64,000 nt of DNA from Octopus bimaculoides. Its lineage: Eukaryota. The stretch is taken from contig NC_068982.1 in NCBI RefSeq assembly GCF_001194135.2, positions 89,547,767 to 89,611,766 on the forward strand, given 5' to 3'. A program made the position numbers and the translations under genes. The notes beneath the pieces were generated by a model. It did no database searches. It was not told where the DNA came from and was given only the letters and a program-made list of their open reading frames with translations. Numbering within the stretch: the first letter of the stretch is position 1; each line of letters opens with the position of its first letter. Below are positions 943 through 1,090 of the stretch, one piece after another.

Positions 943-951
943 AAAGGATAT
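943..951 (-). other. U12-type (minor spliceosome) 5' splice site ATATCCTTT
   Basis: Exact RTATCCTTT consensus where PLC homology requires an exon end. No good GT donor nearby. Confidence 0.8.
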
Positions 952-1090
952 GTAATCAATCCATTTGGACAGCGCCGACACAATGCTTTGGATTTGTTCT
1001 CATTCATTGATGACAGAAGGTAAGCAGGTGGCGTTTGATCTCCTCGACGTGACCTCATCATTGCAGGTGTAATGTTCAATTCCGATTTCT
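952..1090 (-). CDS. PLCE1: PLC epsilon exon, Y box (alternative in-frame acceptor at 1096)
   Basis: Acceptor tttctcttttaagttacag, phase 1 start. Translates KSELNITPAMMRSRRGDQTPPAYLLSSMNENKSKALCRRCPNGLI(T), matching the Y-box motif ([17 protein letters not shown]). Followed by ATATCCTTT, the U12 donor consensus. Confidence 0.88.

What the first reader, a model, noticed from the sequence alone, without database searches (positions are those of the whole stretch)
943..952. U12-type AT-AC minor intron in the PLC-epsilon Y box
Seen: PLC homology ends at ...GGA TTG ATT AC and is followed immediately by ATATCCTTT, the exact minor-spliceosome donor. Reading through gives non-PLC sequence and a stop near 864, and no strong GT donor is nearby. 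Established: AT-AC U12 introns are rare and often position-conserved. My recollection that vertebrate PLC genes carry minor introns needs checking. The branch point and AC end lie outside the window.
Basis: partly seen in the sequence, partly recalled or inferred. Interest (0 to 1): 0.7.

Follow-up and report, generated by a model that had tools for sequence, protein, structure and literature searches.

The report
Conserved minor (U12) intron in PLC-epsilon
The flagged motif is the RNA-confirmed start of a rare minor-spliceosome (U12-type, AT-AC) intron in the catalytic Y box of a phospholipase C-epsilon gene; it is a correct but ordinary example of a known intron class, with a clear history of retention, conversion and loss in other animals.

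Summary
On the minus strand, a 145-nt exon (952-1096) encodes ...SSMNENKSKALCRRCPNGLI(T), the PLC-epsilon Y box. It is followed at once by ATATCCTTT (951-943), a 9/9 match to the U12 AT-AC donor.

RNA contigs from four runs leave the genome exactly at 952 and continue with TCATACAGAG... (HTEKQLMRTY). The donor is therefore used, and no GT alternative was seen. The acceptor lies outside the window and I could not reach it.

Orthologues fill the gap. At the identical codon and phase, five unidentified animal lineages have complete ATATCCTTT...TCCTTAAC-like...AC introns (784-1296 nt). Two further lineages show only the AC end with a branch-site-like motif. One has a U12 GT-AG version, and two have short U2-type GT-AG introns. 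Insect-like loci and vertebrate PLCE1 have no intron there, which fits PLCE1's absence from the human and mouse minor-intron gene lists.

It is a new member of a known kind, of modest interest. One untested lead is that the mammalian PLCB1-4 minor introns lie at the same codon.

The parts
943..951 (-). U12-type AT-AC 5' splice site, ATATCCTTT; the first intron base is 951
   Evidence: Sequence. The RNA contigs of 4 runs end their match at 952. Five orthologous lineages carry an identical 9-mer at the same codon.
1..951 (-). 5' part of the U12-type intron, at least 951 nt long; its 3' end lies beyond the window start. It contains a highly expressed retroelement-like repeat at about 1-380.
   Evidence: There is no RNA contig coverage attributable to the gene between 385 and 951. 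The next exon is absent from the window. Related species differ at about 20 sites in 450-912.
952..1096 (-). Exon D (145 nt): TEKSELNITPAMMRSRRGDQTPPAYLLSSMNENKSKALCRRCPNGLI + AC. This is the N-terminal part of the PLC Y box and ends in phase 2.
   Evidence: RNA contigs; translation; Pfam PF00387; PDB PLC epsilon-1. There are no differences from two related species across 913-1130.
1097..7931 (-). Ordinary GT-AG intron (GTAACT...ctcttttaag) between exons C and D
   Evidence: The loose end of the RNA contigs at 1098 equals the end of exon C.
7932..8045 (-). Exon C (114 nt), X-Y linker
   Evidence: the loose end at 13951 matches the start of exon C.
13953..14134 (-). Exon B (182 nt), ...ELSDLVVYTQAVKFR, start of the Y box; GT-AG borders
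   Evidence: tblastn; sequence; the same 4450-nt RNA contig.
18774..18891 (-). Exon A2 (118 nt), linker; GT-AG borders
32186..32212 (-). 27-nt micro-exon (..CQLYRKQF..), cag|...|GTAATT
   Evidence: The loose end of the RNA contig at 18892 maps here.
59042..59194 (-). Exon A (153 nt), tail of the X box: [40 protein letters not shown]...
   Evidence: tblastn; sequence; Pfam PF00388; homologues. Not checked against RNA.

Best explanation
Position 951 (minus strand) is the first base of a U12-dependent (minor-spliceosome) intron of the AT-AC subtype. The intron interrupts the Y catalytic box of a PLC-epsilon gene in phase 2, between ...NGLI-T and HTEKQLMRTYP. The following mechanism rests on established knowledge of the class and was not shown here. 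U11 snRNA pairs with /ATATCCTTT. U12 snRNA pairs with a TCCTTAAC-like branch site about 10-14 nt before the AC terminus. U4atac/U6atac.U5 then carry out catalysis. Such introns are typically excised more slowly than U2 introns and can limit expression. The intron site is old. It is kept as U12 AT-AC in several invertebrate lineages, switched to U12 GT-AG in one and converted to U2 GT-AG in two. It is missing in insect-like loci and in vertebrate PLCE1, presumably by loss. Shown here: use of the donor in RNA, the donor sequence, gene identity, and conservation of position and type in orthologues. Inferred: the AC end and branch site of this particular copy, and its dependence on the minor spliceosome.
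For: (1) The donor is a 9/9 match to /ATATCCTTT directly after the last coding base. (2) RNA contigs from 4 runs join 952 to TCATACAGAG..., which encodes HTEKQLMRTY and matches PLCE1 '[11 protein letters not shown]'. (3) The intron starts with AT, which is not usable as a canonical U2 GT/GC donor. The five other intron starts read in the window are GT: GTGAGT, GTAATT, GTAAGT, GTAAGT, GTAACT. (4) Orthologues with the same codon and phase show complete U12 introns. L068 has AA|ATATCCTTTCAC...TCCTTAgt(13 nt)...AC, 1092 nt. L075/L078 have ATATCCTTTCTT...ACTTTAAC...AC, 784/788 nt. L079-83 have ATATCCTTTCCG...TCCTTAAC...AC, 1267-1288 nt. L085 has ATATCCTTTACC...TCCTTAAC(10 nt)...AC, 1296 nt. L071 and L077/84 show the AC end plus a branch site only. 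(5) L086 has GTATCCTTT...TCTTTAAC...AG at the same site, that is, a U12 GT-AG intron. (6) The exon and both splice regions (913-1130) are identical in two related species, which differ at about 4% of sites in the adjoining intron. (7) Larue & Roy 2023 (PMC10639083) document minor-to-major conversion and minor-intron loss. They take conversion to run almost only from minor to major, which matches the pattern seen here.
Against: The 3' splice site and branch site of this copy are outside the window and could not be recovered. Laying this species' DNA and RNA contigs on the nearest orthologous locus at 80% likeness gave nothing. Dependence on U11/U12 is inferred from sequence only. The organism is not identified, so the presence of its minor spliceosome was not checked. 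The motif by itself is expected about once per window. Conservation of the 9-mer among the three close species is weak evidence, because 9 unchanged bases are likely at about 4% divergence.
Confidence: 0.92

Rival explanations
1. It is a U12-type intron, but with a non-AC 3' end (AT-AG, AT-AA or AT-AT), so it would not strictly belong to the AT-AC subtype.
For: The 3' end was never seen. Non-canonical minor-intron termini exist (PMC10639083). L086 shows that the terminal dinucleotides at this site can change.
Against: All 12 orthologous loci with an A-start donor or a visible U12-type 3' end finish in AC. These are L068, L071, L075, L077-L085. The only AG-ending U12 copy starts with GT.
Confidence: 0.05
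2. It is a rare U2-dependent AT-AC intron removed by the major spliceosome.
For: Only the terminal dinucleotide AT. U2-type AT-AC introns are known to exist (established knowledge).
Against: As far as I recall, U2-type AT-AC donors resemble /ATAAGT and lack the TATCCTT core. Here positions +3 to +9 are a perfect U11/U6atac-pairing motif. Orthologues carry TCCTTAAC-like elements 10-14 nt from the 3' end with no polypyrimidine tract.
Confidence: 0.02
3. The motif is a chance occurrence, and the real donor is a GT elsewhere or the exon reads through.
For: ATATCCTTT is expected 1.19 times per window by chance.
Against: Four independent RNA assemblies break exactly at 952 and join in frame to the conserved next exon. 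No contig covers 900-951. Read-through meets a stop after 28 codons.
Confidence: 0.01

Closest known systems
U12-type (minor-class) AT-AC introns in general, as catalogued for human and mouse by Olthof et al. 2019 (PMC6717393)
   Same: The donor is identical to top-scoring catalogued donors, for example PLCH1 CCA|ATATCCTTT (score 100) and SLC9A9 CTG|ATATCCTTT. It is not in phase 0. In orthologues the branch site is 10-14 nt from an AC terminus.
   Different: The host gene, PLC-epsilon, is not a minor-intron gene in human or mouse. The 3' half was not observed for this copy.
Minor introns of mammalian PLC paralogues (PLCB1-4 U12 GT-AG; PLCD3, PLCH1/2 and PLCZ1 AT-AC; PLCD1/4 GT-AG)
   Same: Same enzyme family, which is known to be enriched for minor introns: 60% of PLC genes (PMC6865273). 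The last two exon bases of the PLCB donors are consistent with a phase-2 split of the E/N codon before YNK.QLSRIYP, which aligns with the site found here. They are AGA| for B1, GGA| for B3 and AAA|/CAA| for B4.
   Different: Positional homology with PLCB is only a lead. The B3 residue (E) was checked against PDB, while the B1 and B4 residues come from memory. The PLCD1 donor context GCA| does not fit its residue R at this site, so the delta/eta/zeta intron is probably elsewhere.
Vertebrate PLCE1
   Same: Orthologous protein segment: [35 protein letters not shown] versus YLLSSMNENKSKALCRRCPNGLITHTEKQLMRTY.
   Different: A genomic contig (L087) has one uninterrupted exon across the site, ag|GTTCCTATGAAGG...CTGATCCAGCACACC...CAGACAGATG|gtaatg. 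The ORFs P0086 and P0088 show the same. PLCE1 is absent from the minor-intron gene lists.

Membership tests
U12-type (minor) intron, AT-AC subtype | 5' splice site /[AG]TATCCTT directly at the exon end | tested here: met
   ATATCCTTT at 951-943, a 9/9 match. The exon end at 952 is fixed by RNA contigs of 4 runs.
U12-type (minor) intron, AT-AC subtype | The intron is actually excised at this donor | tested here: met
   The contigs join 952 to TCATACAGAG... in frame. Exons A2, B, C and D lie on the same 4450-nt contig.
U12-type (minor) intron, AT-AC subtype | 3' terminal dinucleotide AC | not testable with these tools
   The 3' end is outside the window, and the attempt through an orthologous locus failed. 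In orthologues, AC is present in L068, L071, L075 and L077-L085.
U12-type (minor) intron, AT-AC subtype | Branch site TCCTTAAC about 8-20 nt upstream of the 3' splice site, with no polypyrimidine tract | not testable with these tools
   Outside the window. In orthologues there are 6-8 of 8 matches, 10-14 nt from the intron end.
U12-type (minor) intron, AT-AC subtype | Splicing depends on the U11/U12/U4atac/U6atac snRNPs | not testable with these tools
   This needs a knock-down or an in vitro assay. No minor snRNA gene was found in the window, which says nothing about the rest of the genome.
Phospholipase C epsilon | PI-PLC X and Y catalytic boxes | tested here: met
   PF00388 scores 23.1 bits, equal to its cut-off, on exon A. 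PF00387 scores 25 bits, below its 28.8 cut-off because only about a third of the domain is in the window. The flanking-exon homologues carry PF00387/PF00388.
Phospholipase C epsilon | Closer to the epsilon subfamily than to other PLC subfamilies | tested here: met
   PDB PLC epsilon-1 scores E=1e-21, against 4e-12 for delta-1 and about 2e-11 for beta, zeta and gamma. The nearest metagenomic relatives are named PLC epsilon by JGI (P0066 and P0106).
Phospholipase C epsilon | CDC25/RasGEF domain and C-terminal RA domains | not tested
   The exons that would encode them lie outside the window.

The most novel reading that the evidence does not exclude
This would be the epsilon copy of a single ancient U12 intron site in the PLC Y box, shared with the PLC-beta subfamily. 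On that reading the mammalian PLCB1-4 minor introns sit at the same codon and phase. The site would predate the beta/epsilon split. It would survive as U12 in this animal and several other invertebrates, while vertebrates deleted it from PLCE1 and other lineages converted it to U2-type. One locus would then display every fate of a minor intron.
Probability: 0.35. Interest if true: 0.4.

Novelty: new member of a known kind. Interest (0 to 1): 0.3.

Why it matters
Minor introns make up less than about 0.5% of introns, and their slow removal can gate expression of the host gene. A confirmed, position-conserved one in PLC-epsilon extends the known minor-intron enrichment of the PLC family to a member that lacks one in mammals. 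The set of orthologous loci collected here gives a compact natural series for studying subtype switching, minor-to-major conversion and loss at one site: U12 AT-AC, U12 GT-AG, U2 GT-AG and no intron. For annotating this genome, it shows that the AT-AC junction is real and should not be 'repaired' to a GT donor.

Tried and rejected
(1) A protein search with the 69-aa exon peptide found nothing. Neither this species nor close relatives appear in the protein collection: the best hit to exon A is 84% identical. The species' own next exon and acceptor could therefore not be fetched.

(2) I laid this species' DNA and RNA contigs on the nearest orthologous exon (L071, about 80% identical over the 30 known bases) at the 80% likeness setting. 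The aim was to read the intron's 3' end as a loose end. Nothing was laid.

I repeated it on 1-1900.

(4) Literature searches for PLCE1 with 'minor intron', 'U12' or 'AT-AC' returned nothing relevant. Levine & Durbin 2001 could not be opened under the PMC id I recalled (PMC60238).

(5) I considered whether the delta/eta/zeta minor introns share this site. The donor context of PLCD1 (GCA|) does not fit residue R at this site, so they probably do not. This was not tested further.

(6) No donor was found within the L077/L084 and L071 contigs. Those introns are longer than the sequence held.

(7) I could not locate the exon(s) between exon A and the 27-nt micro-exon. The reading frame requires at least one more.

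Full report
**What is at the coordinates.** The gene lies on the minus strand. Read 5'->3' on that strand, the sequence is ...TGTCGGCGCTGTCCAAATGGATTGATTAC|ATATCCTTTAAATAC.... The last exon base is at 952 and ATATCCTTT occupies 951-943. The open frame encodes ...AYLLSSMNENKSKALCRRCPNGLI(T). Reading through gives unrelated residues and a stop at 866-864. The 9-mer on its own is not improbable: it occurs 2 times in the window against 1.19 expected from shuffles. The case therefore rests on its exact position.

**RNA evidence.**
- Public RNA assemblies of the same species ('organism A') were laid on the region.
- In four runs, one contig each (4450, 2236, 340 and 259 nt) matches 952-1098 without a mismatch and then departs from the genome at both ends.
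- Past 952 all four continue, in mRNA sense, with TCATACAGAGAAACAACTGATGAGAACGTA. The message therefore reads ...GGA TTG ATT AC|T CAT ACA GAG AAA CAA CTG ATG AGA ACG TA, which is ...G L I T H T E K Q L M R T Y.
- This is the continuation expected from PLC-epsilon: the rat/human chains in PDB read ...[26 protein letters not shown].
- No contig covers 900-951, and no alternative junction was seen.
- The donor at 952|951 is thus used. The intron begins with AT, and positions +1 to +9 are the U12 consensus.
- At the other end, the loose sequence equals the end of an exon at 7932-8045, which is followed by GTAACT. Exon D is therefore 952-1096, with an ordinary ...ctcttttaag acceptor.

**Gene context.**
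- Further exons of the same transcript were placed at 13953-14134, 18774-18891 and 32186-32212 (a 27-nt micro-exon), using the same 4450-nt contig.
- The X-box tail at 59042-59194 was placed by homology.
- All five of these other intron starts read in the window are GT. Only the intron after exon D starts with AT.
- Pfam finds PI-PLC-X on exon A and PI-PLC-Y on exons B-D.
- The Y-box segment is much closer to PLC epsilon-1 (E=1e-21) than to delta, beta, zeta or gamma (about 1e-11 to 1e-12).

**The 3' end.**
- The next exon is not in the window, so the intron is longer than 951 nt and its branch site and terminus cannot be read here.
- Neither this species nor close relatives appear in the searchable protein collection.
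- An attempt to read the 3' end indirectly also failed. I laid this species' contigs on the nearest orthologous exon at 80% likeness and nothing was laid.

**Orthologues.** A profile of the following exon retrieved 80 metagenomic loci, and further loci came from protein hits. I inspected the DNA at the codon homologous to the junction. Four states appear at the same codon and the same phase 2.

| State | Loci | Detail |
|---|---|---|
| Complete U12 AT-AC intron | L068 | ..GTC AA\|ATATCCTTTCAC ... TCCTTAgt, 13 nt ... AC\|T CAT ACC; 1092 nt |
| Complete U12 AT-AC intron | L075/L078 | 784/788 nt; branch site ACTTTAAC |
| Complete U12 AT-AC intron | L079-L083 | 1267-1288 nt; branch site TCCTTAAC |
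| Complete U12 AT-AC intron | L085 | 1296 nt; TCCTTAAC 10 nt from AC |
| AC end and branch-site-like motif only; donor beyond the contig | L071, L077/L084 | L071's exon begins HTEKQLMRTYP, as here |
| U12 GT-AG intron | L086 | AA\|GTATCCTTTTTA ... TCTTTAAC ... AG; 972 nt |
| Short U2-type GT-AG intron | L040 | GTGAGT...cag; 141 nt |
| Short U2-type GT-AG intron | L001-L004 | GTAACA...cag; 116 nt |
| No intron | L005-L037, L041 | exon sequence is continuous |
| No intron | vertebrate PLCE1 (L087, P0086, P0088) | one exon, flanked by its own ag\| and \|gtaatg, spans ...CTGATCCAGCACACCGCC... |

The hosts of these contigs are not named by the tools. I describe them only as unidentified animals. 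The label 'insect-like' for L005-L037 is my guess from contig names and was not tested.

**Close-species comparison.** Two related species (organisms B and C) differ from the window at about 20 positions between 450 and 912. They differ at none between 913 and 1130, a stretch that covers the donor, the exon and the upstream acceptor. This fits constraint on the exon and its borders. For the 9-mer alone it is weak evidence at about 4% divergence.

**Literature.**
- The supplementary tables of Olthof et al. 2019 (PMC6717393) list PLCB1-4, PLCD1, PLCD3, PLCD4, PLCH1, PLCH2 and PLCZ1 as minor-intron genes in human and mouse. The alphabetical tables pass from PLCD4 to PLCH1 without PLCE1.
- Baumgartner et al. 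2019 (PMC6865273) state that 60% of PLC genes carry a minor intron.
- Larue & Roy 2023 (PMC10639083) report relative minor-intron enrichment in molluscs and some other protostomes. They also report loss by deletion or by minor-to-major conversion, with conversion assumed to run from minor to major.
- The states found here match that framework. On it, the U12 form is the likely ancestral state at this site.

**Mechanism.**
- Shown here: the junction, the donor sequence, the orthologous branch sites and AC ends.
- Inferred from established knowledge of the class: recognition of /ATATCCTTT by U11 (later U6atac) and of the branch site by U12, catalysis by U4atac/U6atac.U5, and comparatively slow excision that can limit output of the host mRNA.

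**A lead not followed to the end.** The last exon bases at the mammalian PLCB minor-intron donors are AGA| (B1), GGA| (B3) and AAA|/CAA| (B4). These are what a phase-2 split of the codon preceding YNK.QLSRIYP would give. For B3 that residue is E; for B1 and B4 the residues (E and N) come from memory. That codon aligns with the one split here. If this holds, the site predates the beta/epsilon divergence. PLCD1's context (GCA|) does not fit residue R at this site, so the delta-type minor intron is probably elsewhere.

**Verdict.** This is a genuine, expressed, position-conserved U12-type intron, almost certainly AT-AC, in PLC-epsilon. It is a normal member of a well-known intron class, so the interest is modest. 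Its main value is correct annotation and a tidy comparative series.

Noticed in passing
window 34150-34268 (+): The only Rfam gathering-level hit in the window is a full-length 5S rRNA match (45.5 bits, cut-off 38). It lies inside an intron of the PLC-epsilon gene, on the opposite strand. It could be a gene, a pseudogene or a 5S-derived repeat.
   Followed up: no
window 1-380 (-): Repeat inside the U12 intron with very high RNA contig depth (1e4-1e5) and many variant copies. The minus strand encodes a retroelement-like peptide (..RRLRWYGHVVRMEEDSCVKKCHTLTVEGTRGRGRPRKTWAEVVRQDL..), resembling the C-terminal tail of a LINE-type reverse transcriptase ORF.
   Followed up: no
L086:9070-10041: In one unidentified animal, the same PLC-epsilon intron site carries a U12-type GT-AG intron (AA|GTATCCTTTTTA ... 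TCTTTAAC ... AG). This shows a subtype switch at a single site.
   Followed up: partly
L040:3859-3999 and L001:8781-8896: Short U2-type GT-AG introns (141 and 116 nt) sit at exactly the same codon and phase. They are candidate minor-to-major conversions. L040 still has CCTTCTCAC 18 nt from the 3' end, which may or may not be a decayed branch site.
   Followed up: partly
L087:278-622: A vertebrate PLCE1 genomic contig has one exon spanning the site, so there is no intron here. This explains why PLCE1 is not a minor-intron gene in mammals.
   Followed up: yes
window 32186-32212 (-): A 27-nt micro-exon of the PLC-epsilon X-Y linker was recovered from an RNA loose end. The reading frame shows that at least one more exon, ending ...GATG, lies between it and exon A (59042-59194). 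It was not located.
   Followed up: partly
window 1922-2040 and 7800-7930: Long (CA/TG)n and (TA)n microsatellites lie in the introns. The first tripped the read laying filter.
   Followed up: no
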